A stretch of 64,000 bases of DNA, taken from sequence record MG752970.1. The stretch is one strand, 5' to 3'. The notes beneath the pieces are model-generated. The model did not search any database. It saw nothing but the letters and a program-made list of their open reading frames with translations, and was not told the DNA's origin. This document shows, piece after piece, positions 30,580 through 61,708 of the stretch. How positions within the stretch are numbered: the stretch's first letter is position 1; every line of letters begins with the position of its first letter. A program made the position numbers and the translations under genes.

Positions 30580-31296
30580 ATGAAGCTTCAAGAAATTATG
30601 AGAGATGGTCCTGAACTGTTCAAGCAGAAAATGCAGACCATTAGCAAAGTAGATGCAGCCATGACACAATGGATTTATGATCATGTCACATATATCGACG
30701 CATCTGATGGGAGCGATGTGGCGCGGGATAATGTTAGAGTCAAAGATGGGATTATATACTTTGAAAACGTGAAACCCACCGACTGGGGTTTCAATATCCA
30801 AAATCCAGAGAATACAAAGCATGTGCACATGACGATTGATATGAGAGGAGCCAAATTAGATCCGCCTCTTCCTATCATTCACAATGATTCTATCTTCGTT
30901 GACGATGATGTTTTGATAGTTAACTCCATCATTGATGACTGGTCAAAACTTCCAATTTTAGAAGAACATCAAAACTACGATGTTCAGTTTGCCGTCGTTG
31001 GAAATAAAACCATCATCAAGTCGTGGAATGGTTTGAGAAAATATGATCTACACCGTCTGCATTTCAATTGGGAATCAAATGAATCTGTAAAAATAGAATG
31101 CGGTCTTCTCGAGCTTGTGGATTTCCCAAAGCATGCATTTTTTAGTTATTCAGCATACTCCAACAATACAGATCCTCTAGCCCATCAACTTGACGCAGCA
31201 TTTGAGTTTCTTGCGCAATTAAGACGTGATGGTGGAGATGTCTTTGAATTCCAGGAATATCTAATAGATCATGGACTTGAGCAATTTGCTAGGTGA
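30580..31296 (+). CDS. FDxQDW-domain family protein, long form (dispersed copy)
   Basis: Probable start MKLQEI at 30580 (AGGAGA RBS, GATAAATA at 30552); C-terminal DVFEFQEYLIDHG. Confidence 0.75.
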   Translation: MKLQEIMRDGPELFKQKMQTISKVDAAMTQWIYDHVTYIDASDGSDVARDNVRVKDGIIYFENVKPTDWGFNIQNPENTKHVHMTIDMRGAKLDPPLPIIHNDSIFVDDDVLIVNSIIDDWSKLPILEEHQNYDVQFAVVGNKTIIKSWNGLRKYDLHRLHFNWESNESVKIECGLLELVDFPKHAFFSYSAYSNNTDPLAHQLDAAFEFLAQLRRDGGDVFEFQEYLIDHGLEQFAR

Positions 31297-31387
31297 TCCC
31301 AGAGGTGTTCTCAAACAAATCACATAGAAACATACATCTTATCGACCTGATGTGATCTGGGCCTCAAGTTTAAGCTCTCAGATATGA

Positions 31388-31413
31388 AAAAGGACTGCAT
31401 TTGCAGTCCTTTT
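31388..31413. terminator. Bidirectional Rho-independent terminator
   Basis: aaaaggactgca / tgcagtcctttt between convergent genes. Confidence 0.8.
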
Positions 31414-32521
31414 ATCCATTGGCAAGTTTTACTAACTTATTTGTTGAATCATACAGAACGTACGTATTACCACCGTAAATCGTATAATCCCATACCGTAT
31501 CTGTAACATTGTAAGGTGTAACAATTCTACTAAAGCTCAAATCAGATCTATGGAATGCCCATAGCTCATGCAGATTTGGGTCTGCAGAGGTGGCCTGTCG
31601 GCTCACTGTAACGTAAATCTCGTCAGTAACTGGATTGTATTTAACAGGACCGTTTACATAGGCTTGATATTGCGTATTGTAATCCAGTCTGGAATCACTC
31701 AAATCAACATTAAGAATTACCGCACCCGTTAGCGCATTATAACGGGTGATGTTGTACAAATTATTGTTAGGATTTTGCGCCACTATTACGAGTTCGTCAC
31801 CAGATGTTGGTCTAATAATCTGGCCGGCGCTTAAATCACCGTATGGAGTTATCGTAGTAGATAGAGTTGGCGTGTATGTGCCAGAATCCAGCGTATACAG
31901 ATCCATGCTGTAGGAAACGCCATTGCTAGACGTTCCCCATAAGCGTAAGTTAACGCTATCGTAAACCATAGAACCATACAACTTTGCCAAAGTATATTCA
32001 TTTACTATAGCCCCACTAGTTATGTCTATTTTGGCTAATTTTCTGACTGTTCCACTGTCTCTGTTTTCATGAACTCCCCAGACATAGTTTGTCGTTCCAT
32101 CTCCACAAATGTTGAGGAAATCATTTGTCATTCTATATGTGCCTCCGAACAATCCATCTTTGATAGTTCCGGTAGCTGTGTCAATACGAATGATGGCTGG
32201 TTGAGTGGTATGATAGCTGCTGCGAGATAGCAACCACAAAACGCCATTAGAATCTACAGCATAGATGTCACTGACGTTATTGGTCACTCCTAGGTATGCA
32301 TTTAGATCTATCGTTGTAACAAGAGAACCATCAGAAATGTTGTACGATTTTACAGTCGCGTTGTCACAGAGCCAAATTTTCCCACCATGAACTGTCATTG
32401 ATAGTTGACCCTCGTCTCCAGTACCAGTCACGGTGTTCGTCCATGAGAATGGATTAGAAACTACAACATGCATATTAGATAATACACCGAGTATCCAGCT
32501 ACTAATCATTACTTTCTCCAC
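31412..32521 (-). CDS. Beta-propeller-like protein, probably virion-associated
   Basis: Repeated xYD/xxW blade motifs, S/T/N-rich; TAAATA at 32535-32540. Confidence 0.6.
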   Translation of the reverse strand: MEKVMISSWILGVLSNMHVVVSNPFSWTNTVTGTGDEGQLSMTVHGGKIWLCDNATVKSYNISDGSLVTTIDLNAYLGVTNNVSDIYAVDSNGVLWLLSRSSYHTTQPAIIRIDTATGTIKDGLFGGTYRMTNDFLNICGDGTTNYVWGVHENRDSGTVRKLAKIDITSGAIVNEYTLAKLYGSMVYDSVNLRLWGTSSNGVSYSMDLYTLDSGTYTPTLSTTITPYGDLSAGQIIRPTSGDELVIVAQNPNNNLYNITRYNALTGAVILNVDLSDSRLDYNTQYQAYVNGPVKYNPVTDEIYVTVSRQATSADPNLHELWAFHRSDLSFSRIVTPYNVTDTVWDYTIYGGNTYVLYDSTNKLVKLANG

Positions 32522-32569
32522 GTTACGTTTTAGCTATTTATCCAGATCAAGTATGCGGAGAAAAGAAAA

Positions 32570-32590
32570 GGGACTATCTAAGATAGTCCC
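32570..32590. terminator. Rho-independent terminator
   Basis: gggactatct-a-agatagtccc with upstream A tract (U tract on minus strand). Confidence 0.75.
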
Positions 32591-32613
32591 GTAAATTGAA
32601 AGGATACGAAATA

Positions 32614-35737: not shown

Positions 35738-36165
35738 AGTTCCTCCAGCGCTTTGATTACCATTTTTCGTGATGCACTGATGCTCAATGTGTTATCTATT
35801 CGCACATCATAAATGAGTGGAGGAACCCACATTGAATTGGTATCCTCAAATCTACTTTCCTTGATTCTATCCATCCACACAACAAAAGCAGACCCAAATG
35901 CATTTCTACATTCGGGTCTCGGGCAAACAAAGTCCGCAATAACCGGCGTATTTGTGGTGAGAACTTGATCACAAAGCCAGCGCATTCTCCTAGCTTGTTC
36001 AATTCGATCATCAAGACTAAAACCCAAATCCTTATTTAGGTTCTGTCTGACTCCATCGGCATTCCAATGCACAGCACCAAGGAGACGCGCTAATTCTTTA
36101 GCCAGTGTCGTCTTTCCAGAGCCAGGAAGTCCCATCACTAGGATGGGTTTATTCAACAATTTCAT
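35734..36165 (-). CDS. Adenylyl-sulfate kinase-like P-loop kinase
   Basis: GLPGSGKTT, NADGVRQ..NKDLGFS..DR. Confidence 0.78.
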   Translation of the reverse strand: MKLLNKPILVMGLPGSGKTTLAKELARLLGAVHWNADGVRQNLNKDLGFSLDDRIEQARRMRWLCDQVLTTNTPVIADFVCPRPECRNAFGSAFVVWMDRIKESRFEDTNSMWVPPLIYDVRIDNTLSISASRKMVIKALEEL

Positions 36166-36523
36166 GGGTGAATTCTATTTGAATTGGTGGATCAATCTTC
36201 ACCCAAATACTTTCATCCTTTGCTACATCGCCAGCGTGCATAGGCTTCACACCAGCCGCTCTATCAATAGACCAGGTAATGTGATATGGTTTTCCATCGG
36301 GACGATAAGTTTCACCGTCAACTTGCACGATGAATGCTTCGCATCCTTTTGTATCATCCACATATGCCACCACGTCAGCCATCTTTACATTAGGCTGAAC
36401 GTAGTTCTTTCCTACGCCGAATTTAATCGTGACGTGATGCCCGATTTCATCTGTGTAAACCGGAGGAAAGATTGCGAGGAGTTCATTCCTCGTCTTCTCT
36501 GAGAGTATGAGTGCGTCGTACAT
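36149..36523 (-). CDS. 2H phosphoesterase-fold protein
   Basis: Two HxT motifs: HHVTI and YHITW. Confidence 0.7.
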   Translation of the reverse strand: MYDALILSEKTRNELLAIFPPVYTDEIGHHVTIKFGVGKNYVQPNVKMADVVAYVDDTKGCEAFIVQVDGETYRPDGKPYHITWSIDRAAGVKPMHAGDVAKDESIWVKIDPPIQIEFTHEIVE

Positions 36524-36571
36524 AATATAATTGTATTATGTACGAACTCTAAGTAGAAATTAGACCCCAAA

Positions 36572-36593
36572 AAGGGTAGCATTAGCTACCCTT
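36572..36593. terminator. Rho-independent terminator
   Basis: aagggtagc-atta-gctaccctt. Confidence 0.75.
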
Positions 36594-36610
36594 AGGACTT
36601 ACAAAGACTT

Positions 36611-37426: not shown

Positions 37427-37447
37427 TTCGATCTCCGGTTAAAGAAA

Positions 37448-37472
37448 ATGGGTCTCCAATCTAGAGACCCAT
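37448..37472. terminator. Rho-independent terminator
   Basis: atgggtctc-caatcta-gagacccat directly after 37484 stop. Confidence 0.7.
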
Positions 37473-47522: not shown

Positions 47523-48137
47523 TTAATTCAAGACCGTAATGTTGCGGTCAACAAACCATTCTTGGAGTTCAAACACCGAATCAAAATCAATTATCTTCGT
47601 TCCACCTAGTTCTATGATACGAATCTTCCCTGTATTTACGTCCTTGAATACTCGATAACCGGTTTTATCTTCATCGAAATTAATTCTGAATCTGTATTTG
47701 GTATCTAGCATTCGATACACATCGTCAACATGCAAACTGCAGTTTGACATGTAAATTTCGGTTTTATCTGATGGAAGCTCTTCCAAATAATCAATGAACT
47801 TAGGAATGTCAAGAATGCTTTTACGAATGTAAATTCCACCATTGATTTTCTTGGGTAACGATGAAAAATCCAAAATAGAAATCTGTCGTATACTAAGTTC
47901 AAAGCACTCAAGCACATCAAATGGAGCAGGTTTAAGCACATCGTACGCAATTCCAGAACCATATCTAATCACTCTTCCTGGAAAACCAATGGCATTATGA
48001 TCCTTAAGCTGCTTCTTAATGCTATCCCACTCCATATCCGTCACATCATTGTCTCTAAGATCCAGAATCTGTATGTTGTGAGCAATCCAGTCCAATTGTT
48101 CCTGCAATTTGTCGGTTGCAATTTCTAATAGCTTCAT
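47523..48137 (-). CDS. FDxQDW-domain family protein, long form (dispersed copy)
   Basis: MKLLEI; LRR-like ILDFSSLPKKI; SVFELQEWFVDR; TAAATA at 48158-48163. Confidence 0.75.
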   Translation of the reverse strand: MKLLEIATDKLQEQLDWIAHNIQILDLRDNDVTDMEWDSIKKQLKDHNAIGFPGRVIRYGSGIAYDVLKPAPFDVLECFELSIRQISILDFSSLPKKINGGIYIRKSILDIPKFIDYLEELPSDKTEIYMSNCSLHVDDVYRMLDTKYRFRINFDEDKTGYRVFKDVNTGKIRIIELGGTKIIDFDSVFELQEWFVDRNITVLN

Positions 48138-48206
48138 AACTATCCTTATGTTTGAAATATTTATGCCATGATTAGACTGTAAATATTCCTACTAAGAGGA
48201 ATTAAA

Positions 48207-48665: not shown

Positions 48666-49052
48666 TTATAATCGTTTTTCAATAGCAGCTTCTAAGTCAT
48701 TATCAATAATATATTGCTGCAGATCGAAAACATTGTCATATACATAGACTGGTCGCACTCCTTTGTATATATAACCCACGCCAGCACTTCCATTTATGAA
48801 GATTTTTTCTTGATAGTAATTAAAACTGCATGTAATAGTAATATGGCGCGGCGCGATAGAGATCAAATCACACACAAAGTTTATATCTAATCCACTACAC
48901 CGCCTAAAAGTCACGATGAGAGATTTGCGGAGATTATTTTCAAGATACCATTTAACACTTTCTTGATGAACTCTCATATTCTCGGACCATATTAGGTCCT
49001 TTGGTATGCGGTGCAGCATTGCTAGTCGTTCAGTATCACTGTATTCTTTCAT
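48666..49052 (-). CDS. FDxQDW-domain family protein, intermediate form
   Basis: C-terminal NVFDLQQYIIDND. Confidence 0.65.
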   Translation of the reverse strand: MKEYSDTERLAMLHRIPKDLIWSENMRVHQESVKWYLENNLRKSLIVTFRRCSGLDINFVCDLISIAPRHITITCSFNYYQEKIFINGSAGVGYIYKGVRPVYVYDNVFDLQQYIIDNDLEAAIEKRL

Positions 49053-51337: not shown

Positions 51338-51363
51338 AAAAGGAGACCTTAAGGTCTCCTTTT
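51338..51363. terminator. Bidirectional terminator, perfect palindrome
   Basis: aaaaggagaccttaaggtctcctttt between convergent genes. Confidence 0.8.
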
Positions 51364-51944
51364 TATTGCTTAAATTTTGCTGGATCTTTATCGTATCCGT
51401 TTGATATCATAAAATCCTGGAATTCAAACACATCATCTAGCATAATTTCCGTAACACCCCACATGACATGAATTCCTGCTAGAGTTGCATTCACTATACA
51501 TTTCGTTCCAACGCTGTACACAAATCTGTCTAGATCCATTTGAAGCATTTTTTCAACATCATTGAATGACAGCATCGTGTGGTGGGTGTCTACAAAATTC
51601 ACATGATGTGATTCAACTAATGTTGACAGATCGGTGTCTAGTTCGCAGTTATATAGACTTAGATTCCCAATCGATTTGAAAATATTAAAAGAAGAAATTT
51701 TTCGGCGATGGATTGTGAGTCCATTAAGATCACTAAAAGTAATTGGTGAATCTAATAACTTAAGAGCATTCTTTGTCTGTCCTATGCCAACATGTATATT
51801 GGATGGCAATACCAATTCAGATGCAATCAGATACTTAGTCAGCTCAGCTCCTAGAACTGATTTCTGTTTTTCCAAATCCCAGGCACTTAGATTCTGTTCT
51901 ATCCAATCGACTAAAATATCTCTTTTAATTTCTGAAAGCTTCAT
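51363..51944 (-). CDS. FDxQDW-domain family, long form, array member 11
   Basis: MKLSEI; IGNLSLYNCEL; DVFEFQDFMISNG. Confidence 0.8.
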   Translation of the reverse strand: MKLSEIKRDILVDWIEQNLSAWDLEKQKSVLGAELTKYLIASELVLPSNIHVGIGQTKNALKLLDSPITFSDLNGLTIHRRKISSFNIFKSIGNLSLYNCELDTDLSTLVESHHVNFVDTHHTMLSFNDVEKMLQMDLDRFVYSVGTKCIVNATLAGIHVMWGVTEIMLDDVFEFQDFMISNGYDKDPAKFKQ

Positions 51945-51947
51945 TCA

Positions 51948-52556
51948 TTAGCCTCTCTTGAAGCAGTCCACACGATCGAACCACTCATTATCGATAAGCC
52001 ATTCTTGAAATTCAAACTCATCATTGAATTTTTCTTGCAAAGAATGACGGTATTCTTCATCAGGATACTCAGCAATTATAACATCACCTGATCTATTAAT
52101 GATTAGATCTACAGTAGAATACACCCATTGTCTAAGATTAGATCCTAGTAGCACGCCAAAATCTTCAAACGTTAGCAATGTGCTTTCAAATCTAACATCC
52201 CTACAAGCATGAATGGCCCATTGAACAAGTGCGCCATCATACGTGCAGTACAAAATTTCTGCTCTATCCTGAACAACCTTTGGCAGTTTACTAATACCTT
52301 CGGCAGTCAGATGAAATGAATTCAATCTCAGAATTGACACTGTATTCATGCCGATTGGTGGCGACCAAGTCGTAGGGTTATCAAAGCTTCCAGTAAAGTT
52401 AGCAGTCAATCCAGTAGCATCTAACACTGAATTCTTGATGCGTGAGATCCATTCTTGACCACCAGTCGCATCACTTGTTAAATACCCCAACTTTCTAAAC
52501 TCTGCGGCTATCTGTTGATCACTCATGCCTTCACTCAACCATTTCTTAAATCTCAT
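51948..52556 (-). CDS. FDxQDW-domain family, long form, array member 10
   Basis: MRFKKWLSE; ISKLPKV; EFEFQEWLIDNE. Confidence 0.8.
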   Translation of the reverse strand: MRFKKWLSEGMSDQQIAAEFRKLGYLTSDATGGQEWISRIKNSVLDATGLTANFTGSFDNPTTWSPPIGMNTVSILRLNSFHLTAEGISKLPKVVQDRAEILYCTYDGALVQWAIHACRDVRFESTLLTFEDFGVLLGSNLRQWVYSTVDLIINRSGDVIIAEYPDEEYRHSLQEKFNDEFEFQEWLIDNEWFDRVDCFKRG

Positions 52557-52602
52557 ATTACGCCTTAAAATTTACCAATCGCATTAGTAGTCCAATATTT
52601 TC

Positions 52603-53223
52603 TCATTCACTAATCTCAAAGTAAGTAGAATTATCCGACACACCGAGATTAATTAATTCATTCTGCAAATCAAACACGTCTAGACCAGACAGGTTATGTG
52701 TGTCATATTTTAATCTGAGTCCTTTCGACTCTGTATTTGATATCTCGAAATTCTTTCCTATAGAGTATATCACTTTAGTTCCTGAAGATATCAAATCTAT
52801 TAGATCATTCTCACGTATTTTGGTATCGCCAAGCAATATTTTCTTTCTACCCTTTAGGTAATCCAAATAAAGACCCGTTAATTTACAATCATAAATGAAC
52901 AATTCAATAGGATTTCCAAGCAGTGATATGTTGTTTATGGTGAAACCTCTTACGAAGACGGTCTCTATATCCGGTAGTGTGTTAGGAATATTAAAAGGAG
53001 TTCCCTTTCTTTTGGAATACAGCTCAAGATATGTAAGATCTTTTTGAGTTGTGCGTCCTGCCAGAACCTCATGCGCATTATAATTGCCGCCCAAATATGG
53101 ACCAAAACCCTTTCCTTCAAATCTATATCTCTTCAAGCTGTCAACAAAGTCAGCCCACTGGCGCATGATGTCATCATTCTTTATTTCACTCAACCTCATA
53201 TTATGCCTTGAAGAGTTTATCAT
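52603..53223 (-). CDS. FDxQDW-domain family, long form, array member 9
   Basis: Internal MRLSEI; IELFIYDCKL; DVFDLQNELINLG. Confidence 0.8.
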   Translation of the reverse strand: MINSSRHNMRLSEIKNDDIMRQWADFVDSLKRYRFEGKGFGPYLGGNYNAHEVLAGRTTQKDLTYLELYSKRKGTPFNIPNTLPDIETVFVRGFTINNISLLGNPIELFIYDCKLTGLYLDYLKGRKKILLGDTKIRENDLIDLISSGTKVIYSIGKNFEISNTESKGLRLKYDTHNLSGLDVFDLQNELINLGVSDNSTYFEISE

Positions 53224-53791
53224 GCAGATCTTTTTCGATCAAATAATTCTGAAATTCAAACACATCACTGGTTGTCCAGCCCGCAGGATTACTAGAACCT
53301 GTATCATGTACAAAATAATTTGACTCATCAAAACCAATCAGGATACCATTTACATTGTACATAAGATCTATCTGAGCTTCAAGCAGTTTGTCAAACTCAG
53401 CGAGACTTAGCTTTGAATCATGCAGCTCTACATACTTCACATTAGCTGTAACATAATCAGCAAACCCTGGTGCCACCTTGCACTTACCAATAACAAGCTC
53501 ATTTACTTTAGGCCAATCACCGTAGTTTCCTATTTCTGATCCACGAGTGACAGATAGTTGATTAAGCTTATCGAATTTGACAGGCCATTTTAGGAGTGAT
53601 ATGTTCTTCTTAGCATCAAGAATCCAGGTCTCAGTATCAACTGTGAGTTTACCAGCTTTCAGCATCTTGTGCGAAATAAAATTAATATGATCGATTTCAC
53701 CGGTGTCATCGGCTATCGCAAAGTTGGCAAACAACCAATCAATTAACGCATCATCTCTTTTTGCTGGAGATAGTATCTCATCTAGTTTCAT
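53201..53791 (-). CDS. FDxQDW-domain family, long form, array member 8
   Basis: MKLDEI; WPKVNELVIGKCKV; DVFEFQNYLIEKD. Confidence 0.8.
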   Translation of the reverse strand: MKLDEILSPAKRDDALIDWLFANFAIADDTGEIDHINFISHKMLKAGKLTVDTETWILDAKKNISLLKWPVKFDKLNQLSVTRGSEIGNYGDWPKVNELVIGKCKVAPGFADYVTANVKYVELHDSKLSLAEFDKLLEAQIDLMYNVNGILIGFDESNYFVHDTGSSNPAGWTTSDVFEFQNYLIEKDLHDKLFKA

Positions 53792-53800
53792 TTGATTCCC

Positions 53801-54403
53801 TTATTGAACGAAATAGCGTTCATCGTCTAACTGCATCTGCATAAGCGTGTCTTGCAAATCAAATACTGATTTAACCACTATGCGCTTAATAGAATTTGAT
53901 TTATTATCTCTTACTGATATTTCTAAAACATCGTACTTGTTGATGGTTAAATTAATTCCTCTATCACTGTCAGAGATAAAGTAACTAACTTCAAGCGGCC
54001 CAGATTCGATAATCAAGCACAAATCATTTAGTCTTATTTTAGAGTTTGACAGACGCAAGAGATCCTTGATATGAGACTTGGCATATTGTACTATTCCAGG
54101 TCCTAGGTTGCACAACAGAGCTCTAAACTCATCTACTATCGGCATCTTAGAATACTCATTCAATCTGCATGTCGTCATTTTCAGTGCAAAGAGCCTTGGT
54201 ATTCTACTAGGAAATTCAATAACCTCATCATGACCGTCCATGACTATTTGCGTTTCTGTTAATGAATATCCGGTATTCAGCCTACCGACAATTTCACCCG
54301 ATGTCAGATGGCCACCATAATGCTGATCGATTCCACTTACGTCATACTTATAAACGAATTCTTCCCATGCATTTTCGGTAGATCCTATCTCACGCAGCTT
54401 CAT
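53801..54403 (-). CDS. FDxQDW-domain family, long form, array member 7
   Basis: MKLREI; MPIVDEFRALLCNL; SVFDLQDTLMQM. Confidence 0.8.
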   Translation of the reverse strand: MKLREIGSTENAWEEFVYKYDVSGIDQHYGGHLTSGEIVGRLNTGYSLTETQIVMDGHDEVIEFPSRIPRLFALKMTTCRLNEYSKMPIVDEFRALLCNLGPGIVQYAKSHIKDLLRLSNSKIRLNDLCLIIESGPLEVSYFISDSDRGINLTINKYDVLEISVRDNKSNSIKRIVVKSVFDLQDTLMQMQLDDERYFVQ

Positions 54404-55044
54404 GGCTTGAATCCTTTACTTATTAGATCGTGTGACAGCAGATAGTCCTGTAGTTCGAAAGGATCATCAAACGCTATGTGAGTAACGTTATGAGGGTTTG
54501 TAGATTTCGATGAATCGATCGCGTTCGCGCTGTGTGATATTTTATATTTGTCGTTCACGTACATTACGGTTATAGAACCGGGACTGTAGTTAAATTCCTT
54601 TCCACTAGCAAGCATGAGCTCAAAATCTGCATATGATATCAGCGTGCCTCTGAGTACCCACTTACCAACATCCTTCGTTACCCATTCAGCAAACCCCTTG
54701 CGCACGTTGCAGTCTATTAACACCAGATGTTCTAGCTTAGGATAGTTCTGAAAGCCCTCTAGATAGCAATCCTCTAGCTGCATTCCAATTGCTTGTCCCA
54801 TCTTAACCGGAAAGGTAACAGTTCTGTTAGGAAAGTTTCTAGCATTCACTCGTATCGTCATGTGCTCTAGACCAACTAACTTTCCATTCCTGACTAAATG
54901 GCCGTAGTCTTTCTTCTGAATCGCCTGAGTTGTTCCTGAGTCTATGTTCGTAGATAGAACCAAATGATCTAACGTCCACTTTAGAAGTTCATAATCCTCC
55001 GAATCTTCTTTCAACCATTGCTTGAAGCTCATCTCTAATTCCAA
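54400..55044 (-). CDS. FDxQDW-domain family, long form, array member 6
   Basis: Internal MSFKQWLKE; YPKLEHLVLIDCNV; DPFELQDYLLSHD. Confidence 0.8.
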   Translation of the reverse strand: MELEMSFKQWLKEDSEDYELLKWTLDHLVLSTNIDSGTTQAIQKKDYGHLVRNGKLVGLEHMTIRVNARNFPNRTVTFPVKMGQAIGMQLEDCYLEGFQNYPKLEHLVLIDCNVRKGFAEWVTKDVGKWVLRGTLISYADFELMLASGKEFNYSPGSITVMYVNDKYKISHSANAIDSSKSTNPHNVTHIAFDDPFELQDYLLSHDLISKGFKP

Positions 55045-55056
55045 AAAGTTATTGTT

Positions 55057-55647
55057 CTATTTAAACCATTCGCTGGTATCCACGTTATCAATCAACCATT
55101 CCTGAGCATCAAACTCATCATCAAAGTACTGAATTCCATTATCATACGCTGATGGTCCCTGATATGAGACTCTACATTTATGTTTGATGTCGCTCACTAT
55201 TCTAAGCCAGTCGCCATCGATATTCACGTAGTAGGTAAAATCTATTACGGGCAGGAATGCTAATTCAATAACATCTCCAATTCGCAGCAATGAGTTAGTC
55301 ACACCAACCTGCTTCGCTATCTTATTCTTTATGTACTCAGCAAACCCATCTCCTAGGTTACACTTATCGACTGAAAAGATATCAGTAATAGGTAAATTAG
55401 TATAATCGTTAATCGTCAGTCGGTCCACATTCAGCTCATACAGGTATCTAATCCCATCCGGTAACCTCAACACCTCTCCGTTACCAGAAAAGGAAGCCGT
55501 ACAGTTACCAGTATTATCGTCAGCAGCCTCTTCTAGGAATTCATCTAAAGTGAGCTCCTTTGCATACGCACCGTTAGGCATCACGTATATAAATTCGGTG
55601 CGGATTCCATCAAATGCGTTTGACTTAGCAATCTCATTTAACTTCAT
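55057..55647 (-). CDS. FDxQDW-domain family, long form, array member 5
   Basis: MKLNEI; LPITDIFSVDKCNL; DEFDAQEWLIDN. Confidence 0.8.
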   Translation of the reverse strand: MKLNEIAKSNAFDGIRTEFIYVMPNGAYAKELTLDEFLEEAADDNTGNCTASFSGNGEVLRLPDGIRYLYELNVDRLTINDYTNLPITDIFSVDKCNLGDGFAEYIKNKIAKQVGVTNSLLRIGDVIELAFLPVIDFTYYVNIDGDWLRIVSDIKHKCRVSYQGPSAYDNGIQYFDDEFDAQEWLIDNVDTSEWFK

Positions 55648-56279
55648 TTGAAGTACTCCGATCCAGTAAAGCCGTTCTGGATCATCCAGTCCTGCATTTC
55701 AAAGACATCATCAAAGAACTGAAGTGCAGGAGCACCTCGGGCGTCAGCCAAGGGCGTCATCACCACGATCTTTGCGGTTTTAGAGTATCCCTTTTGCTGC
55801 ACCGCTTCACCCGCGGTAACTTTTAATATGGTGTTTCCTATATGATACTCTAGACTTCGAATGCCGCTTACGAGATGGTAGAAAATATCCTCCTTAATCT
55901 TCGTAGAATATGATCTTAAGGCTTGATCGCTACGAATGTTGTTCACAACCGAATCGGGTACCACGCAGTTCGTAAATTGATACCCATACACTGAATCAAA
56001 GGGGACGTCAGGAACTATGTAGTTAGCAACCGATAACCATCTTACTCTAGGTAGGGCGTACGGAAGTTCTAGCGGCGTCTGTGAATTAGGTTTACCATCT
56101 AAATGAACGGCAGCCTCTGACATTCTATCTTGATCGAGAAGCTTCAGCAAGCGTTCTCGTTGCTTGATGTATCCAGATCCAAAGTGCACCTGCGCGTTCT
56201 GCATCAACCAATCGCACAAGGCTTCATTATCCTGAGTTATTTCTTCTAGTTTCATAGCTGCGTAAAGAAGGTTTTCCAC
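55644..56279 (-). CDS. FDxQDW-domain family, long form, array member 4
   Basis: Internal MKLEEI; LPRVRWLSVANY; DVFEMQDWMIQNG. Confidence 0.8.
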   Translation of the reverse strand: MENLLYAAMKLEEITQDNEALCDWLMQNAQVHFGSGYIKQRERLLKLLDQDRMSEAAVHLDGKPNSQTPLELPYALPRVRWLSVANYIVPDVPFDSVYGYQFTNCVVPDSVVNNIRSDQALRSYSTKIKEDIFYHLVSGIRSLEYHIGNTILKVTAGEAVQQKGYSKTAKIVVMTPLADARGAPALQFFDDVFEMQDWMIQNGFTGSEYFK

Positions 56280-56839
56280 TTATCGGTTGACATCAAGTAA
56301 TCCTGTAGCTCAAATACGTCCGTGAGCTTGACATCAGGATTCTTTCCTTTAATCACATATTCATGACCGCTATACATCAGAAGTTCCTTTCCAGCTCTGA
56401 ACTCAAACATAACATCAGCATCTAGAATCTTCTCAAAGTCGTCCAGGTTTACGAGTGAATCTGAAACCGAAACCGTCGGTCTATTCTCCTGAACGTACTC
56501 TCCAAATCCCTTTGCAATGTAGCAGCGCTTCAGAAACAAGGCAGCAGTTTCAGGCCAGTTAGCATAGTTCTTGATAGTGACTTCCTTGAAATCGATGAAG
56601 CGTACCTCATAGATCTTTATTGGAAACTTAATCTCTATCTCGGTCTTCTTGTTCTCAATCCCACATTCTGTCAACCCGTAAATGACACCGTTTCCATGTA
56701 TCTTAGCTCGCAGTACGTCCTCAGTCATGGGCTGAATCATTCCCATATCGGTGAAACCAATCTTAAAGTTAGCAACCAGATCCTTGATCTCCTGCTCATA
56801 CTTATTCTGTATCTCTGTCAACCTCATGTACGACCTCAA
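56252..56839 (-). CDS. FDxQDW-domain family, long form, array member 3
   Basis: Internal MRLTEI; WPETAALFLKRCYI; DVFELQDYLMSTD. Confidence 0.8.
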   Translation of the reverse strand: MRSYMRLTEIQNKYEQEIKDLVANFKIGFTDMGMIQPMTEDVLRAKIHGNGVIYGLTECGIENKKTEIEIKFPIKIYEVRFIDFKEVTIKNYANWPETAALFLKRCYIAKGFGEYVQENRPTVSVSDSLVNLDDFEKILDADVMFEFRAGKELLMYSGHEYVIKGKNPDVKLTDVFELQDYLMSTDKWKTFFTQL

Positions 56840-56845
56840 ATAAAA

Positions 56846-57469
56846 TTACGCATCTAAAAATACCTCTGACGGCAGATTCAAACCTAGAATATATTCCTGC
56901 GCGTCGAAGATATCGGTAACCTGGGTTTGCTGAGAGGCTGCACCGTGCTGATTACGCCAAATTCGTATGTAACCGTCAGCCCCTTTCTTTACTTGAAATA
57001 TGATATCGTTCAACGTCCAGAAGTACTCAAGCATTCCCGTGTCAACCAACTCCAGAACCTCATGCATGCGCATAGGAACATTATTGAGTCTTGCAGAGTT
57101 AGAAACCTTGTTCTTAAGGTACTCGTATACAGCAGGACCGCAGTCACAGTTACGCATGATAAGGTCTTCAACGCTAGGCAGATACGAAAAATCCTGTATT
57201 CTGAATTTCTGCAGAGTAAGTTCCCTTAGGGTTGGAATAGGTACCGGCATGTCAAACAGTTCCTTACCAGCAGTATTTCCAACTAGGGTTAGATTCGTAT
57301 AGTCTAAATCACTCAAATTCTGAATTCGGCGCAGTATGAGCCTAATCTCATTCTCGTCCAGCGGGTCCTTACTTACTTGACCCTTCCTACAGTGATCCAT
57401 AAACCAGTCAAAAATCTCTTCACTCTCATCTTCTCTTATCTCCGTCAACCTCATTTTCCCATTCCCCAA
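56846..57469 (-). CDS. FDxQDW-domain family, long form, array member 2
   Basis: Internal MRLTEI; LRELTLQKFRIQDFSYLPSVEDLIMRNC; DIFDAQEYILGLN. Confidence 0.8.
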   Translation of the reverse strand: MGNGKMRLTEIREDESEEIFDWFMDHCRKGQVSKDPLDENEIRLILRRIQNLSDLDYTNLTLVGNTAGKELFDMPVPIPTLRELTLQKFRIQDFSYLPSVEDLIMRNCDCGPAVYEYLKNKVSNSARLNNVPMRMHEVLELVDTGMLEYFWTLNDIIFQVKKGADGYIRIWRNQHGAASQQTQVTDIFDAQEYILGLNLPSEVFLDA

Positions 57470-57511
57470 TTCGAATAAAACTTAAAACCTACCAGATCTT
57501 CCCGGATAAAA

Positions 57512-58072
57512 TCACTGAGAAAAGAACTTCTTCCAGTTGTCATCAGACATCAAGTACTCTTGAAAGTCAAACACATCCCGAAACACCGCACCTGTCTCCC
57601 AGCCATCAAACGTGACATCGTAGTCAGAACCCCAATACGTGAGCTGACAATCCCCTCGTTTAATCTCAAACTGCTTTCCGCTTCCCAGTATTACATCAAA
57701 CTCAGATAACGGTATCACGCACTCCTCGATCTCAACCTCATCGACCTTCTCTGATATGTACTTTCCCAACCCATTCTCAAACTTAGTATTAAACAGACGC
57801 AGTCTCTCAGCCTTCGGCCAATTGAAATAATCTAGAATTCTGCAGTTTGCTAATGAAACCACTCTAACTGAATCTACTGGAAAGTAAAACCTAGCAAGCT
57901 TACCATTACTTCCTAATGTACACTCATGTACATCGGTTAATACGCCATCTTTTATTCTAGAAGCTATATCTGCTAAACTTAATACACCTGCATTCCGAGT
58001 TACAGTAAACGTTTCTTTAAGCTTTTTAGCTAACTGTTTACTATTCTGACTCTTGATTTCTCTTACAAGCAT
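57512..58072 (-). CDS. FDxQDW-domain family, long form, array member 1
   Basis: MLVREI; VRVVSLANCRILDYFNWPKAERLRL; DVFDFQEYLMSDD. Confidence 0.8.
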   Translation of the reverse strand: MLVREIKSQNSKQLAKKLKETFTVTRNAGVLSLADIASRIKDGVLTDVHECTLGSNGKLARFYFPVDSVRVVSLANCRILDYFNWPKAERLRLFNTKFENGLGKYISEKVDEVEIEECVIPLSEFDVILGSGKQFEIKRGDCQLTYWGSDYDVTFDGWETGAVFRDVFDFQEYLMSDDNWKKFFSQ

Positions 58073-58354
58073 CCTAAACCTTTATCCTTACCGAATAAAA
58101 CATTTTCATCTTTTATTTACTGTATCTTATATACCAGAATCCCTAATACATAAGCCGCGAAGCGGCCCCTACACTCCCCGGATGTTTCTATAGCTCAGAA
58201 ACATTCCCGATGTATATAAGAACCTACAAACTCTGGTCTCGCGGTCTATGGTATCACACCGTCTCAGCGCTCAGGCGATTCAAAACGGTCCCAAGCGAAT
58301 TCTAGAATGTATAAAACCTAGGTAAAGGATGGAAAGGATTTCGAAAATGGGCGT

Positions 58355-58362
58355 TATTTATA
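58355..58362 (-). promoter_or_regulatory. T4-type late promoter TATAAATA
   Basis: Exact motif pointing into the long-form array; second TAAATA at 58114-58119. Confidence 0.6.
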
Positions 58363-58744
58363 GGGAGAAAAAGTGAGGGTTGGATAACGTTTGGAAAGCA
58401 TCGGAAAACCTTGGATATGAGCGCGTAAAAACGAAGGCCTCACACTCACACAGGATAACACTCGGCCGTCTACAAACCATCCCCCTAATGCACATCTGTT
58501 CCTGTATGTACGAGGCCACTAATCCCGGAGAGTTTCGCCCAGAAAACTAAGGGGTCTGGAGGCATTTTGTGTATCGTTTCGATGATTTCATACCTCTGCA
58601 GACTTACCTGAGGTACTCAGAGATGATTCGTTATGCTTGTTGATGTGCACAGTATCGAAATGTAGTAGATGATCTGAGCATCGTCTGTATGTTTCGAGTG
58701 TTCCATATAGTGCCGGAACACTTTGCACACTATTCCATAGATAC

Positions 58745-58774
58745 ATTATACACTACTGGTTTCGAAATGTACAC
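58745..58774 (-). promoter_or_regulatory. Sigma70-like promoter TGTACA-17-TATAAT
   Basis: Perfect -10, 17-nt spacer; no convincing ORF downstream. Confidence 0.6.
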
Positions 58775-59017
58775 TTTAGGCACATTCTTTTCGAACTATG
58801 ATACAGAATTTCAACAATTATCAAACCCATGGCATATTGTTTCACAGAATTCCTAGATCATAGTCAAATATTCTACAGAATTTCGAACTAGGATCCCCTG
58901 TTACACTTTAAATTTCTACTATGTACAAAAGTATGGTACAATATTAATAATGGAAAAGGGACGTCCCTCGCCGGGCCCCTCCTTCTGGGTTCTTCTGAAT
59001 GTTTGGTATAGACCCAG

Positions 59018-59203: not shown

Positions 59204-59204
59204 G

Positions 59205-59441
59205 TCAGTATGCGGAGAAGAAGTCGATCATCCATTCTTGAAAATCGAAGATGTCGTCCATGCAGACAGAGTATGTAACATATCTGTTAGGATGAACCTC
59301 GACATATTCATCGTGCAAAGTGATCTGAATTAGTCCGTTAATAAAGACCACAAAGCTGCTGGGAGCGACCACGTTCAGAGTCTTGGTTGTCAGAGCATGA
59401 CAATCAGTAACCACCTCCAAGATGTCAATGATCGTAATCAT
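59205..59441 (-). CDS. FDxQDW-domain family, stand-alone mini protein
   Basis: DIFDFQEWMIDFF. Confidence 0.75.
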   Translation of the reverse strand: MITIIDILEVVTDCHALTTKTLNVVAPSSFVVFINGLIQITLHDEYVEVHPNRYVTYSVCMDDIFDFQEWMIDFFSAY

Positions 59442-59485
59442 TTGAAGAAAAGTGAATGTGAGAACGGGCCTCCGGACAATTCTTC

Positions 59486-59701
59486 TTACTTCTTGATCGT
59501 GAACAGATGCAGTGTTTGCTCGAGATGTCGATGGGCGTAGTTCATACCACCGTATTCTCGAAGCGGTTCAGGTACATGACGATCGTAAATCTCTTTGAGA
59601 GCAATCTGTCGAAGACGTTCTTCCTCGGGTTTGTCGTTGGCTTCGATGGCGTCGAGGATCTTAGAAACCAGAGTGAGGAGGGTGGTGTTCTTTACAGGCA
59701 T
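59486..59701 (-). CDS. Hypothetical protein
   Basis: Short ORF. Confidence 0.55.
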   Translation of the reverse strand: MPVKNTTLLTLVSKILDAIEANDKPEEERLRQIALKEIYDRHVPEPLREYGGMNYAHRHLEQTLHLFTIKK

Positions 59702-59728
59702 GGGAGTTTTGGTATAGCGCCGGGTGAA

Positions 59729-59827
59729 TTACAGATGAACTGGAGATACGTACATGAGACCGAGAATCAGACCGATGTAGATCATGAAGACGATCGATGC
59801 ACCGATTGCAAAGTGAATGTCTTTCAT
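59729..59827 (-). CDS. 32-aa single-TM peptide
   Basis: Own translation MKDIHFAIGASIVFMIYIGLILGLMYVSPVHL; ATGA overlap with upstream gene. Confidence 0.55.
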   Translation of the reverse strand: MKDIHFAIGASIVFMIYIGLILGLMYVSPVHL

Positions 59828-60060
59828 TTTGTCAGATCCTCGATGAACTCGATCTCGGCGTTGATTCGTTCCAGCTCTTTGTCGTAGCCGAGACGAACAA
59901 ATTTCGAGTGAGCATCGTTTTGCGCGTACTCATCGATCAAAAATGCGGGATAGCTGGTTGTAGGATACGCTTTAGCCGCTTTCTCTACAAAGTGCTGGTA
60001 CATTTGATCGAGAAAACGCTTTCGACCTTTGAGGATCAGGAGCTCAGATGAGAGGGTCAT
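59824..60060 (-). CDS. Hypothetical protein
   Basis: Short ORF downstream of TATAAT at 60090-60095. Confidence 0.55.
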   Translation of the reverse strand: MTLSSELLILKGRKRFLDQMYQHFVEKAAKAYPTTSYPAFLIDEYAQNDAHSKFVRLGYDKELERINAEIEFIEDLTK

Positions 60061-60131
60061 GATTAGAATCCACTGGGTTTGTAGATTCTATTATACACTG
60101 GGTTCGAACTTATGGTTACGTTGTTACAATT

Positions 60132-60314
60132 TCAGTAGAGTTCCAGAGCTTCTTGACGAACGTCTTCCTTCTGGGTTTGACTGTTGATCTTATCAACAGC
60201 AACGTTTGCGTCTGCTTCAGTATCGAACTCGATGACTGAGGTATGGATCGAGCAGCCTGCACCGCTAGGGTAATCTGAATACACCATGCGAGTAGTAACT
60301 AGAATCTTGAACAT
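60132..60314 (-). CDS. Hypothetical protein
   Basis: AGGAG RBS; IEFDTEADANVA. Confidence 0.6.
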   Translation of the reverse strand: MFKILVTTRMVYSDYPSGAGCSIHTSVIEFDTEADANVAVDKINSQTQKEDVRQEALELY

Positions 60315-60324
60315 CTGGAAACTC

Positions 60325-60552
60325 CTATAGACGGTTGGTGATGATCCAATCTTGAAGATGAAAGATGGACTTTAGGCTGAAGACTTTGTGAACTCGTTGA
60401 TCAAACAGAAAAATTTCGTCATACACGAAGATTCGAATCTTTAGCAGCGGAAGATCGATTGTTCTCTGGCGAGTATCTACACAGGTGTCTTCTGTTGGTA
60501 CTAGATCTACCAGACATTCCAACACGTCAATGAGAGCCTGATGCGTAGACAT
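60325..60552 (-). CDS. FDxQDW-domain family, stand-alone mini protein
   Basis: SIFHLQDWIITNRL. Confidence 0.75.
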   Translation of the reverse strand: MSTHQALIDVLECLVDLVPTEDTCVDTRQRTIDLPLLKIRIFVYDEIFLFDQRVHKVFSLKSIFHLQDWIITNRL

Positions 60553-60553
60553 T

Positions 60554-60784
60554 TCAGCAGAAGGTCGTAACTATCCAGTCCTGCAGATCGAACAGAGATT
60601 CAAAGCGCAGTGGTATATTCGTTCCCAATAGTTGACCATGATACGTAGTAATAGAATGTCCCTGGTTGTACAGCGTAAATGTTGGAAGCTCTACGTTTAG
60701 GCAATCGAGACTTGGTACTTCATACACAACCGATTTAGGTAGAAGATCCCGTACGCAGTCTGCAATTTCTGTTAAGCTGAACAT
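60554..60784 (-). CDS. FDxQDW-domain family, stand-alone mini protein
   Basis: SLFDLQDWIVTTFC. Confidence 0.8.
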   Translation of the reverse strand: MFSLTEIADCVRDLLPKSVVYEVPSLDCLNVELPTFTLYNQGHSITTYHGQLLGTNIPLRFESLFDLQDWIVTTFC

Positions 60785-61012
60785 TTATAGTAAATTGGTT
60801 ACTATCCAGTCCTGCAGATCGAAGAGAGACCTGAAGAGCACTGGATTCATCAATGATTGTCCATGAAACAGTGAAATGTGATTGTCATAAATGTACAGAC
60901 TCAACGGCGGAACATCTACACCCACCTTGTCCAGATTCGGTATCTCGTATACGATAGATTTAGGTAGAAGATCTCGTATACAGTCTGCAACCTCTTTAAC
61001 GGTGATATTCAT
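60785..61012 (-). CDS. FDxQDW-domain family, stand-alone mini protein
   Basis: SLFDLQDWIVTNLL. Confidence 0.8.
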   Translation of the reverse strand: MNITVKEVADCIRDLLPKSIVYEIPNLDKVGVDVPPLSLYIYDNHISLFHGQSLMNPVLFRSLFDLQDWIVTNLL

Positions 61013-61238
61013 CGCAATGGCTTATTACCCAGTCTTGAAGATCGAATAGTGATGATAGCATTTCGTGTTTCTGTAATCCCATATCACGCCAGTAGACCTG
61101 CACATTGTCGGCGCAAATGTAGATAATTAGTTCTGGACAACCTACATCTACACGTCTTAGATTCTCGAACTCATAGATGGCAGCACGTGGAAACAAATCC
61201 TGCATGCATTGACCGAGTTCCTTCACCGTACAGATCAT
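60996..61238 (-). CDS. FDxQDW-domain family, stand-alone mini protein
   Basis: SLFDLQDWVISHC. Confidence 0.8.
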   Translation of the reverse strand: MICTVKELGQCMQDLFPRAAIYEFENLRRVDVGCPELIIYICADNVQVYWRDMGLQKHEMLSSLFDLQDWVISHCDEYHR

Positions 61239-61471
61239 AACAGATTAGTAACCACCCAGTCTTGGAAATCAAACAGGTCTGAGAACGTTCGTGGTTCTCG
61301 AAATGGGATTGTGTTGTAAACCGAAATCAAACCATTCATCAAGAAGATGGTGATCGGAATTCCCTTGATCCACTGAGTTGCTGGAAGTCCTAGCATCATC
61401 GGAGTAGCAGCATTCCTAAACTTGTCACCAACGATGCTGGCTAGAACGTCGTTAATTTCGTCTGCTGTCAT
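61235..61471 (-). CDS. FDxQDW-domain family, stand-alone mini protein
   Basis: DLFDFQDWVVTNLL. Confidence 0.8.
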   Translation of the reverse strand: MTADEINDVLASIVGDKFRNAATPMMLGLPATQWIKGIPITIFLMNGLISVYNTIPFREPRTFSDLFDFQDWVVTNLL

Positions 61472-61474
61472 TTG

Positions 61475-61708
61475 CTACACCATGTTAGCTATCACCCAGT
61501 CCTGAAAGTCGAAGATGTCGGTAAAGATTGTACAGTGTCCGCGGACGCCGGCGTCATACACTCGAATTTGATGATCAACAAAAACAGAGAATGGACCCTT
61601 TTCAAACCAAATGCTTTTCGTGACGTCATTACTACCTTCGCCTAGGTATACCTTGTTCTTATTTCCAAGGGCATCTTTTAAGATACTAATAACTTCTTCG
61701 GGGTTCAT
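61475..61708 (-). CDS. FDxQDW-domain family, stand-alone mini protein
   Basis: DIFDFQDWVIANMV. Confidence 0.8.
   Translation of the reverse strand: MNPEEVISILKDALGNKNKVYLGEGSNDVTKSIWFEKGPFSVFVDHQIRVYDAGVRGHCTIFTDIFDFQDWVIANMV

What the first reader, a model, noticed from the sequence alone, without database searches (positions are those of the whole stretch)
30580..61708. One unannotated domain expanded to 21 genes in two architectures: a possible two-wave effector system
Seen: 21 ORFs end in the same motif, (D/S)xF(D/E)xQ(D/E)(W/Y)(L/I/M/V), preceded by a helix and several short beta-like strands (~70 aa). Thirteen ~190-240-aa long forms (30580, 47523, and 11 in 51363-58072) carry an MKLxEI or MxFKxWLxE N-terminus plus an LRR-like middle and sit behind TAAATA late promoters. 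One 128-aa form lies at 48666. Seven ~75-aa forms (59205-61708) are the domain alone, in the early-type small-gene region. Established: T4 internal proteins use a short N-terminal capsid-targeting peptide (IPIII MKTYQEFIAE) removed after a Glu by the prohead protease, and T4 IPI* is an injected defence inhibitor. Inference: long forms are packaged and injected, mini forms are made early, and both use the conserved helix to dock on a common partner while variable surfaces sample different host targets, such as defence proteins. I do not recognise a named family.
Basis: partly seen in the sequence, partly recalled or inferred. Interest (0 to 1): 0.92.

Follow-up and report, generated by a model that had tools for sequence, protein, structure and literature searches.

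The report
Giant phage family of capsid-tagged LRR proteins
A jumbo phage of Ralstonia spends about a tenth of its genome on at least 63 fast-evolving copies of one unnamed small protein family whose ends look like the tags phage T4 uses to load proteins into its head and inject them, so it may carry an unusually large injected arsenal.

Summary
The window is Ralstonia jumbo phage RsoM2USA (record 124,001-188,000). The motif marks 63 ORFs (36 kb, 10.5% of the genome), always within 15 residues of the C-terminus and nowhere else. A further 34 long forms lie just past the window. No Pfam, PHROG, PDB or BFVD match exists outside the phage's own paralogues. Relatives occur only in a few uncultured phages.

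Long forms are small acidic LRR-like proteins (AlphaFold pLDDT 93). Their two N-terminal types match T4 head-loading peptides fetched here: MKTFKQFLxE resembles the internal-protein signal, and MKLxEI resembles the Alt propeptide MELITE|L. Both end in the L/I-x-E site of the T4-type prohead protease, which this phage encodes. Three virion proteins found by published mass spectrometry carry the TFKQ(F/Y) core; one, ORF89, is a divergent family member.

Operon heads carry the late-promoter motif TAAATA; minis do not. Orthologues evolve about ten times faster than their neighbours.

Minis match long forms over 21 residues by sequence, and over the terminal domain only by predicted secondary structure. 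Packaging is well supported. Early mini expression and a shared docking partner remain untested.

The parts
30580..31296 (+). Long form ORF240 (238 aa), N-terminus MKLQEI, isolated gene
   Evidence: ORF. Long-form HMM E 3e-38. ATAAATA 27 nt upstream.
30553..30559 (+). Late-promoter-like ATAAATA for ORF240
   Evidence: Genome-wide, 49 of 87 ATAAATA sites lie 15-70 nt upstream of a same-strand ORF start, against about 4 expected.
47523..48137 (-). Long form ORF265 (204 aa), N-terminus MKLLEI
   Evidence: Its orthologue in the relative phage is 65% identical, while the flanking genes are 92-93% identical.
48158..48164 (-). Late-promoter-like ATAAATA for ORF265
48666..49052 (-). 128-aa form ORF267: different N-terminal part, same C-terminal motif. 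No CTS-like N-terminus and no TAAATA upstream.
   Evidence: Orthologue 55% identical.
51363..58072 (-). Tandem operon of 11 long forms, ORF274-284. Gene coordinates: 51363-51944, 51948-52556, 52603-53199, 53201-53791, 53801-54403, 54400-55032, 55057-55647, 55644-56255, 56252-56827, 56846-57454 and 57512-58072. Nine have M[KR]LxEI-type N-termini (57512 has the variant MLVREI). Two, 51948 and 54400, have M(R/S)FKxWLxE.
   Evidence: AlphaFold model of 53201-53791: pLDDT 93, pTM 0.87. Orthologues are 46-78% identical, and 3 genes have no orthologue.
58114..58119 (-). TAAATA (as GTAAATA), 47 nt upstream of the first gene of the array (57512-58072)
   Evidence: GTAAATA is 14.7-fold enriched upstream of genes.
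55058..55063 (-). Internal TAAATA, 31 nt upstream of 54400-55032; overlaps the stop codon of the upstream gene
59205..59441 (-). Mini form ORF285 (78 aa), isolated copy
   Evidence: No TAAATA upstream. No counterpart in the relative locus L002.
60325..61708 (-). Tandem array of six mini forms, ORF288-293. Gene coordinates: 60325-60552, 60554-60784, 60785-61012, 60996-61238, 61235-61471 and 61475-61708. The array is co-oriented with, and directly downstream of, the small membrane-like ORF294 (61705-61998).
   Evidence: AlphaFold model of 60785-61012: pLDDT 92.7, order helix, five strands, helix. No late motif. Absent from the syntenic site in L002, but present on short contigs of other uncultured relatives.

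Best explanation
This is a lineage-specific family of at least 63 genes in jumbo phage RsoM2USA. The long forms (about 185-290 aa) have four parts:
- a short N-terminal peptide of T4 head-loading type, ending in L-x-E;
- a helix and 3-4 LRR-like repeats;
- a small beta-meander;
- an invariant C-terminal helix, DxF(D/E)LQDWLIxNG(F/Y)ExL.

Proposed mechanism. The long forms are transcribed late from TAAATA promoters. The N-terminal peptide takes them into the scaffolding core of the prohead. The Peptidase_S77 (T4 gp21-type) prohead protease clips them after the Glu. They are kept at low copy inside the head and ejected with the DNA into the next cell. There, the fast-evolving LRR surfaces bind different host proteins, probably defence or takeover targets.

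The minis (75-80 aa) are the terminal beta-meander plus helix alone. They have no loading peptide and no late promoter, so they are probably made in the cell rather than packaged. They may occupy or compete for whatever the conserved C-terminal helix contacts.

Shown: family size, architecture, restricted distribution, rapid divergence, promoter association, similarity to T4 signals, and presence of the protease.

Inferred: packaging of the MKLxEI members, clipping, ejection, targets, and the role of the minis.
For: 1. T4 sequences fetched from GenBank. IPII and IPIII start MKTYQEFIAE and IPI starts MKTFKEF. Alt starts MELITE|L.
2. RsoM2USA N-termini. Members ORF81 and ORF89 start MKTFK(L/Q)FLSE. 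ORF275 and ORF279 start M(R/S)FKxWLxE. 42 of 63 members start M[KR]LxE[IV].
3. Both types end in the L/I-X-E site after which gp21 cleaves. T4 propeptides range from 7 to 65 residues, and the capsid targeting sequence (CTS) is 10 residues (PMC9026906).
4. ORF379 is Peptidase_S77 (E 5e-24). ORF383 is Gp23 (E 2e-97) with about 51 extra N-terminal residues.
5. Published LC-MS/MS of virions identified ORF89, ORF132 and ORF438 (PMC8504454). ORF89 and ORF132 begin MKTFKQF, and ORF438 carries TFKQY a few residues in. ORF89 also ends in the family motif (NVFKCQEELIDMGYEKL).
6. The orthologue of window gene 55644-56255 in a related phage carries MGFKKWIGE in place of MKLEEI on an otherwise 53%-identical body. 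The two N-terminal types are therefore interchangeable.
7. The first 10 residues of the model have pLDDT 65 against more than 90 elsewhere, which fits a free peptide.
8. Late motif: 49 of 87 ATAAATA sites sit 15-70 nt before a start codon, against about 4 expected. The motif precedes structural genes and 16 of 56 non-mini members, including the heads of the family operons seen in the window and checked in the second array. It precedes 0 of 7 minis.
9. Arms-race signature: orthologues are 46-78% identical while flanks are 91-98%. dN is 0.13-0.48 against 0.02-0.05. Genes are gained and lost. The termini are more conserved than the middle.
10. LRR-like middle: the profile hits about 20 long LRR proteins in several stretches each.
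Against: - No MKLxEI member has been seen in virions. The only proteome covers 10 abundant bands.
- ORF89 belongs to a divergent subgroup. It is linked to the main family only by the termini and a weak first-repeat match (hhalign probability 40%).
- MKLxEI lacks the aromatic residues at positions 4 and 7 that matter for T4 IPIII targeting.
- The proteins are acidic (median pI 4.9, net charge -9), whereas T4 internal proteins are described as basic.
- The conserved C-terminal helix is not explained by packaging. Virion proteins ORF132 and ORF438 lack it.
- dS is saturated, so positive selection is not demonstrated.
- Nothing identifies a target.
Confidence: 0.5

Rival explanations
1. The long forms are late-made cytoplasmic binders that are never packaged. 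They would act in the producing cell, for example masking late phage proteins from host sensors or sequestering host factors. Under this view the N-terminal MKLxEI is a translation or fold feature, not a loading signal.
For: No MKLxEI member appears in the published virion bands. MKLxEI lacks the aromatic residues important for T4 CTS targeting. The proteins are acidic. Three co-located members (record 199,898-201,683) lack the N-terminal motif altogether.
Against: The N-terminal hexapeptide stays conserved in 42 paralogues that otherwise share about 16% identity, and it is modelled as flexible. It is interchangeable with a peptide like the T4 internal-protein signal. It resembles the propeptide of the packaged T4 Alt. 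ORF89 was found in virions.
Confidence: 0.2
2. The conserved C-terminal helix is itself the head-loading tag: a cargo-loading peptide that docks on the scaffold or the inner capsid wall, as in encapsulins. All 63 proteins, minis included, would then be packaged, and the N-terminal L-x-E would be only a processing site.
For: The helix is the only element shared by every member. It sits on at least two different preceding folds: a beta-meander in the main family and minis, and a helical/LRR end in ORF61 and ORF88-90. It always lies at the extreme C-terminus. T4 Alt is processed at both ends.
Against: Minis lack late promoters. Virion proteins ORF132 and ORF438 lack the helix. AlphaFold packs the helix onto the protein's own sheet with high confidence.
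Confidence: 0.12
3. The conserved ends are just caps of a small LRR fold, and the expansion is drifting duplication without a common mechanism.
For: LRR domains need N- and C-terminal caps. There is no functional evidence for any member.
Against: Sixty-three intact ORFs with invariant F and Q are maintained over 36 kb, and orthologues are retained in a relative. The minis keep the helix without any LRR. The N-terminal peptide is not part of the confidently folded core.
Confidence: 0.1
4. They are exchangeable virion-surface adaptors or receptor-binding modules, anchored by the conserved helix, that help give the phage its wide host range.
For: A variable binding scaffold with a constant anchor is the logic of phages carrying several receptor-binding proteins. 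RsoM2USA infects three Ralstonia species (PMC8504454).
Against: Prohead-protease-type N-termini point to the head interior. The genes are not in the tail module. The small monomeric acidic LRR is unlike known receptor-binding proteins. None was among the abundant virion bands.
Confidence: 0.08

Closest known systems
T4-type internal head proteins (IPI, IPII, IPIII and the variable IP loci of T-even phages) carrying a capsid targeting sequence
   Same: - A short N-terminal peptide ending in L/I-x-E. The MKTFKQFLxE type is nearly identical to T4 MKTFKEF / MKTYQEFIAE.
- The same protease and capsid families are present.
- Expression is late.
- The mature parts are highly diverse and fast-evolving, with only the signal conserved (PMC3012670).
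   Different: - 63 copies instead of about 3-10.
- Acidic LRR-like proteins rather than small basic ones.
- An additional invariant C-terminal helix.
- Stand-alone minis.
- Most members use a 5-residue MKLxE peptide rather than the 10-residue CTS.
- Packaging has not been demonstrated for these members.
T4 Alt (packaged, injected ADP-ribosyltransferase)
   Same: A very short N-terminal propeptide of the same form: MELITE|L against MKLxE|I. It is packaged at low copy and ejected, and is processed by gp21.
   Different: Alt is a 682-aa enzyme. There is no sequence or fold relation to the mature parts of this family.
Leucine-rich-repeat proteins (Pfam LRR clan; small LRRs such as dynein light chain 1, U2A', internalin caps)
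   Same: The family profile hits bona fide LRR proteins in several stretches each. The predicted structure alternates strand and helix. The best, though non-significant, PDB hits are LRR proteins.
   Different: No member reaches any Pfam LRR model. There are only 3-4 irregular repeats. The C-terminal beta-meander plus helix has no counterpart.
Poxvirus ankyrin/PRANC and cellular F-box or SOCS-box adaptor families (analogy only)
   Same: The logic of a large family built from a variable repeat scaffold plus a short constant C-terminal docking helix.
   Different: No sequence or significant structural similarity. No known partner. Bacterial host.
Ejection-protein sets of giant phages (phiKZ, SPN3US)
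   Same: Many different head-internal proteins clipped after Glu by a gp21-related protease and delivered to the cell (PMC9026906; abstracts).
   Different: Different phage lineage and cleavage motif. Those sets are not built from one expanded LRR family.

Membership tests
T4-type CTS-tagged internal/ejected head proteins | N-terminal peptide resembling a T4 head-loading propeptide | tested here: met
   T4 IPI/II/III and Alt N-termini were fetched. The type-2 N-terminus (MKTFKQFLSE and M(x)FKxWLxE, in ORF61, 81, 89, 90, 275 and 279) resembles the IP signal. The type-1 N-terminus (M[KR]LxE[IV], 42 members) resembles Alt MELITE|L.
T4-type CTS-tagged internal/ejected head proteins | L/I-x-E prohead-protease site closing the peptide | tested here: met
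   L-x-E lies at residues 3-5 (type 1) or 7-10 (type 2). Specificity is taken from PMC9026906. This is a sequence match only; no cleavage was observed.
T4-type CTS-tagged internal/ejected head proteins | gp21-type protease and gp23-type capsid encoded by the same phage | tested here: met
   ORF379 matches Peptidase_S77 (4.8e-24) and phrog_207. ORF383 matches Gp23 (2.2e-97).
T4-type CTS-tagged internal/ejected head proteins | Late expression | tested here: inconclusive
   TAAATA/ATAAATA precedes 16 of 56 non-mini members, including the operon heads examined, and it also precedes the structural genes. There are no transcript data.
T4-type CTS-tagged internal/ejected head proteins | Physical presence in virions with a clipped N-terminus | not testable with these tools
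   Only the divergent member ORF89 is reported in virions (PMC8504454). Its N-terminal state is not reported.
T4-type CTS-tagged internal/ejected head proteins | Small basic proteins co-packed with DNA | tested here: not met
   Median pI is 4.9, and 1 of 56 members has pI above 7. So these are not IP homologues. Acidic cargo such as GFP can still be loaded through a CTS.
Leucine-rich-repeat proteins | Match to curated LRR models | tested here: not met
   No Pfam LRR hit at E of 0.1 or better for 10 members, nor for ORF88-90.
Leucine-rich-repeat proteins | Repeat-level similarity to bona fide LRR proteins and a solenoid-like fold | tested here: inconclusive
   About 20 long LRR proteins are hit in 4-12 stretches each, at E 1e-11 to 8e-4. 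The AlphaFold secondary structure is compatible. Foldseek LRR hits have E of 0.29 or worse, and PDB sequence hits E of 0.045 or worse.
Any curated protein family containing the C-terminal domain | Significant profile or fold match | tested here: not met
   No match in Pfam or PHROGs, in PDB by sequence, or in PDB by fold. The BFVD search of the long-form model returned only the phage's own paralogues.

The most novel reading that the evidence does not exclude
The phage head carries a library of about fifty different LRR 'binder' proteins: an injected, diversifying repertoire. Each recognises a different host protein through its variable surface. All share one C-terminal helix that plugs them into a single common executor or anchor. 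The unpackaged minis, which are that plug alone, act as competitive regulators or antidotes for the same site.
Probability: 0.15. Interest if true: 0.9.

Novelty: new variant of a known kind. Interest (0 to 1): 0.72.

Why it matters
T4 showed that phages can inject a few diverse proteins tagged only by a short head-loading peptide, and that one of them disarms a host restriction system.

If the reading here is right, a jumbo phage has scaled that idea up. It would use one modular binding scaffold in dozens of fast-evolving versions, taking a tenth of its genome. That would be the largest candidate injected-protein repertoire in any phage.

It would also offer three practical things:
- a ready source of new anti-defence or host-takeover binders;
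- a natural set of short loading tags for packaging foreign proteins into large capsids;
- a simple rule for finding internal proteins in T4-related jumbo phages, namely an N-terminal M-K-(L/T)...L-x-E peptide in a genome that also encodes a Peptidase_S77 protease.

Even if packaging fails, a 63-member family with an invariant C-terminal helix and stand-alone 'helix-only' minis is an unexplained feature of jumbo-phage biology.

Tried and rejected
- **Pfam and PHROGs on 10 members.** Only sub-threshold noise: DUF7585, a tail terminator and DUF4183.
- **tblastn of one long form against 50,697 phage records.** Only RsoM2USA itself was hit.
- **Degenerate DNA pattern for F(D/E)LQDWL(I/V) over IMG/VR.** Eight single hits. 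Only L016 is a possible distant member, and two others are mid-protein chance matches.
- **Foldseek.** Both models against PDB, and the long form against BFVD, gave no significant hit outside the phage's own paralogues.
- **PDB by sequence.** Only weak LRR hits.
- **dN/dS.** dS is saturated at about 0.8 to above 1.5, so omega is not interpretable. Only the tenfold dN contrast is used.
- **Clamp-binding or PIP-box peptide.** Rejected for the C-terminal motif: the spacing of aromatic residues does not fit, and the helix is modelled as packed, not as a free tail.
- **C-terminal gp21 cleavage site.** Rejected: P3 is mostly Val, not Leu or Ile.
- **Nucleotide-level homogenisation.** Considered as the reason for the conserved N-terminus. 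The Leu codons differ among paralogues (CTT, CTA, CTG, TTG, TTA), so selection acts on the peptide.
- **A second (early) upstream motif, by k-mer enrichment.** Nothing beyond TAAATA variants and terminator-like CCCTTTT.
- **Rfam, tRNA and repeat scans of the 950-bp gap upstream of the array.** Nothing significant.
- **Named relatives.** The ten non-RsoM2USA hits looked up come only from unnamed Logan/ENA metagenome contigs. XacN1 was not scanned directly.


Full report
**Identity of the window.** The window is 100% identical to Ralstonia phage RsoM2USA (MG752970.1, 343,806 bp); window coordinate + 124,000 gives the record coordinate. Every gene in the finding is annotated 'hypothetical protein'. 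The describing paper does not mention paralogues or duplications (PMC8504454).

**Observation.**
- All 21 ORFs are present. Thirteen are long forms, one is a 128-aa form and seven are minis. All end in [DSN]xF[DE]xQ[DEN]x[LIM][LIVM].
- An HMM made from the long forms alone ranks the 128-aa form and all seven minis directly after the long forms, ahead of noise.
- Profile-profile comparison of long against mini aligns only 21 columns (probability 91%, E 9.5e-7).
- AlphaFold gives confident models for a long form (53201-53791; pLDDT 93, pTM 0.87) and a mini (60785-61012; pLDDT 92.7).
- The last elements have the same order and loop lengths. In the long form: H130-138, E142-147, E150-155, E158-163, a 7-residue loop, E171-174, H177-186. 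In the mini: H5-15, a short extra strand, E29-33, E36-42, E45-50, a 7-residue loop, E58-60, H63-73.
- So 'mini = terminal domain alone' is supported at the level of secondary-structure topology. I could not superpose coordinates.

**The family is much larger than the finding.**
- I read the rest of the genome in pieces. The motif is in 62 ORFs by a strict pattern and 63 by a looser one that adds ORF89.
- It always lies within 15 residues of the C-terminus, and nowhere else in 3,263 six-frame segments.
- A second block of tandem arrays with 34 long forms lies at record 188,617-213,419, just beyond the window. Others are ORF61, 81, 82, 88, 89, 90, 185 and 344.
- Together they make 36 kb, or 10.5% of the genome. 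F and Q are invariant in all 63.
- Pairwise searches join 44 long forms into one cluster. The minis, ORF61/88/89/90 and ORF81/82 form separate clusters.
- The ORF88-90 group is linked to the main family by the termini and a weak first-repeat match only (hhalign probability 40%).

**Distribution.**
- There are no Pfam or PHROG families.
- A profile search of 1.84 billion representatives gave 68 hits. About 45 are short family members. About 20 are long proteins hit in several stretches each, and the six of these tested are classical LRR proteins.
- The ten non-RsoM2USA hits looked up come from unnamed metagenome contigs.
- One relative (ENA ERZ23872309, locus L002) is syntenic. It has 11 tandem long forms plus counterparts of 47523 and 48666, but no minis at the corresponding site. 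Minis do occur on short contigs of other relatives.
- Foldseek finds nothing significant in PDB for either model. In BFVD, the long-form model finds only the phage's own paralogues.

**N-termini.**
- Forty-two of 63 members start M[KR]LxE[IV]. Only about six other ORFs in the genome do.
- Five or six members start M(x)FKx(F/W)LxE.
- I fetched the T4 sequences rather than rely on memory. IPII and IPIII begin MKTYQEFIAE, IPI begins MKTFKEF, and Alt begins MELITE followed by L.
- A review of T4 head assembly states four relevant points. gp21 cleaves after L/I-X-E. Propeptides range from 7 residues (Alt) to 65. The first 10 residues of IPIII suffice for head loading. CTS fusions load GFP and enzymes that are then delivered to the cell (PMC9026906).
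- RsoM2USA encodes a Peptidase_S77 protease and a Gp23-family capsid protein.
- The published virion analysis covered ten gel bands and named ORF38, 86, 89, 132, 257, 356, 359, 361, 383 and 438.
- ORF89 starts MKTFKQFLSE, ORF132 starts MKTFKQFLNT, and ORF438 contains MLTFKQY near its start. ORF89 ends NVFKCQEELIDMGYEKLAEM, which is the family motif.
- The orthologue of 55644-56255 in the relative has MGFKKWIGE where the window gene has MKLEEI, on an otherwise conserved body. The two peptide types therefore substitute for each other.
- The first ten residues of the long-form model are the only low-confidence part.

**Timing.**
- ATAAATA is by far the most enriched upstream 7-mer (41 of 178 upstream regions, 25-fold). 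GTAAATA and other TAAATA variants follow.
- Forty-nine of 87 genomic ATAAATA sites lie 15-70 nt upstream of a same-strand start. About 4 are expected at random, and 11 are seen in antisense.
- The motif precedes the portal, sheath, baseplate, neck and terminase genes and virion proteins ORF132 and ORF438. It also precedes family genes ORF61, 90, 185, 240, 265, 342 and 344.
- The TAAATA variant precedes the heads of the arrays: ORF284, 301, 307, 308, 325, 332 and 334.
- None of the seven minis, ORF294 or ORF267 has it. This supports 'late' for the long forms. It shows only 'not late-type' for the minis.

**Evolution.**
- Between RsoM2USA and the relative, flanking genes are 91-98% identical and family orthologues 46-78%.
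- Three window members have no orthologue, and the relative has members of its own.
- dN is 0.13-0.48 for the family against 0.02-0.05 for the flanks. dS is saturated.
- Within orthologues the first 8 residues (72% identical) and the C-terminal motif region (77%) are more conserved than the middle (55%). Among paralogues the contrast is 57% and 37% against 16%.

**Mechanism.** The best reading is a greatly expanded, LRR-based version of the T4 internal-protein principle. Late synthesis is followed by loading into the prohead core through the N-terminal peptide, clipping after L-x-E, ejection with the DNA, and binding of varied host targets.

**Points against this reading.**
- The proteins are acidic.
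- MKLxEI lacks the aromatic residues important in the T4 signal.
- No MKLxEI member has yet been seen in virions.
- The invariant C-terminal helix is unexplained.
- The minis carry only that module, which argues it has a function of its own.

**Verdict.** The packaging inference is substantially strengthened by direct comparison with T4 sequences and by published mass spectrometry on a divergent member. The 'second wave' and 'common partner' parts remain speculation.

Noticed in passing
window 40332-43473 (ORF254-258): A run of non-family genes also has T4-CTS-like N-termini: MTTFKEYLLE, MNQTFKQFLTE, MKFSDYILE and MRLKQFLME. They surround ORF257 (42235-42771), a virion protein by published mass spectrometry. 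ORF254 matches Zeta_toxin/AAA_33 kinase models. These are candidate packaged enzymes.
   Followed up: partly
window 58073-59017: A gap of about 950 bp without ORFs lies between the minis' block and the long-form array. It has several short TTCGAAA-containing repeats and a canonical TATAAATA at 58355-58362 (- strand), 283 nt upstream of the array. No tRNA or Rfam match.
   Followed up: partly
window 59486-59701, 59824-60060 (-); 62261-62893 (+): The deposited annotation appears to use the wrong strand here. ORF286/287 (+) and ORF295 (-) overlap ORFs on the opposite strand, and it is those opposite-strand ORFs that are conserved in the related phage (62%, 46% and 84% identity).
   Followed up: partly
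record 199,898-201,683 (L009:13898-15683, - strand; ORF320-322): Three inverted family members inside the second array lack the MKLxEI start and have no TAAATA upstream. They may be non-packaged variants of the long form.
   Followed up: no
L016:8784-9875 (IMG/VR UViG_3300033562_001460): A 364-aa ORF in an unrelated viral contig ends ...NNMFDLQDWLVKHKL..., 16 residues from its C-terminus. It gives weak hits to all family HMMs (E 4e-4 to 6e-3). The C-terminal helix may exist outside this phage lineage.
   Followed up: no
window 62001-64000 and 36001-38000: Local G+C rises to 0.49 and 0.46, against about 0.41 elsewhere.
   Followed up: no
record 271,358-274,009 and 263,233-263,730 (ORF403-405, ORF385): More CTS-like N-termini (MTFKAFLQE, MTTFKEYLTE, MKLEDLFE and MQTFKQFLSE) on genes inside the neck/tail and head modules. 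ORF404 shares phrog_12810 with ORF254.
   Followed up: no
record 62,335-64,857 (ORF86): This virion protein by published mass spectrometry carries AAA ATPase domains, which is unusual for a particle component.
   Followed up: no
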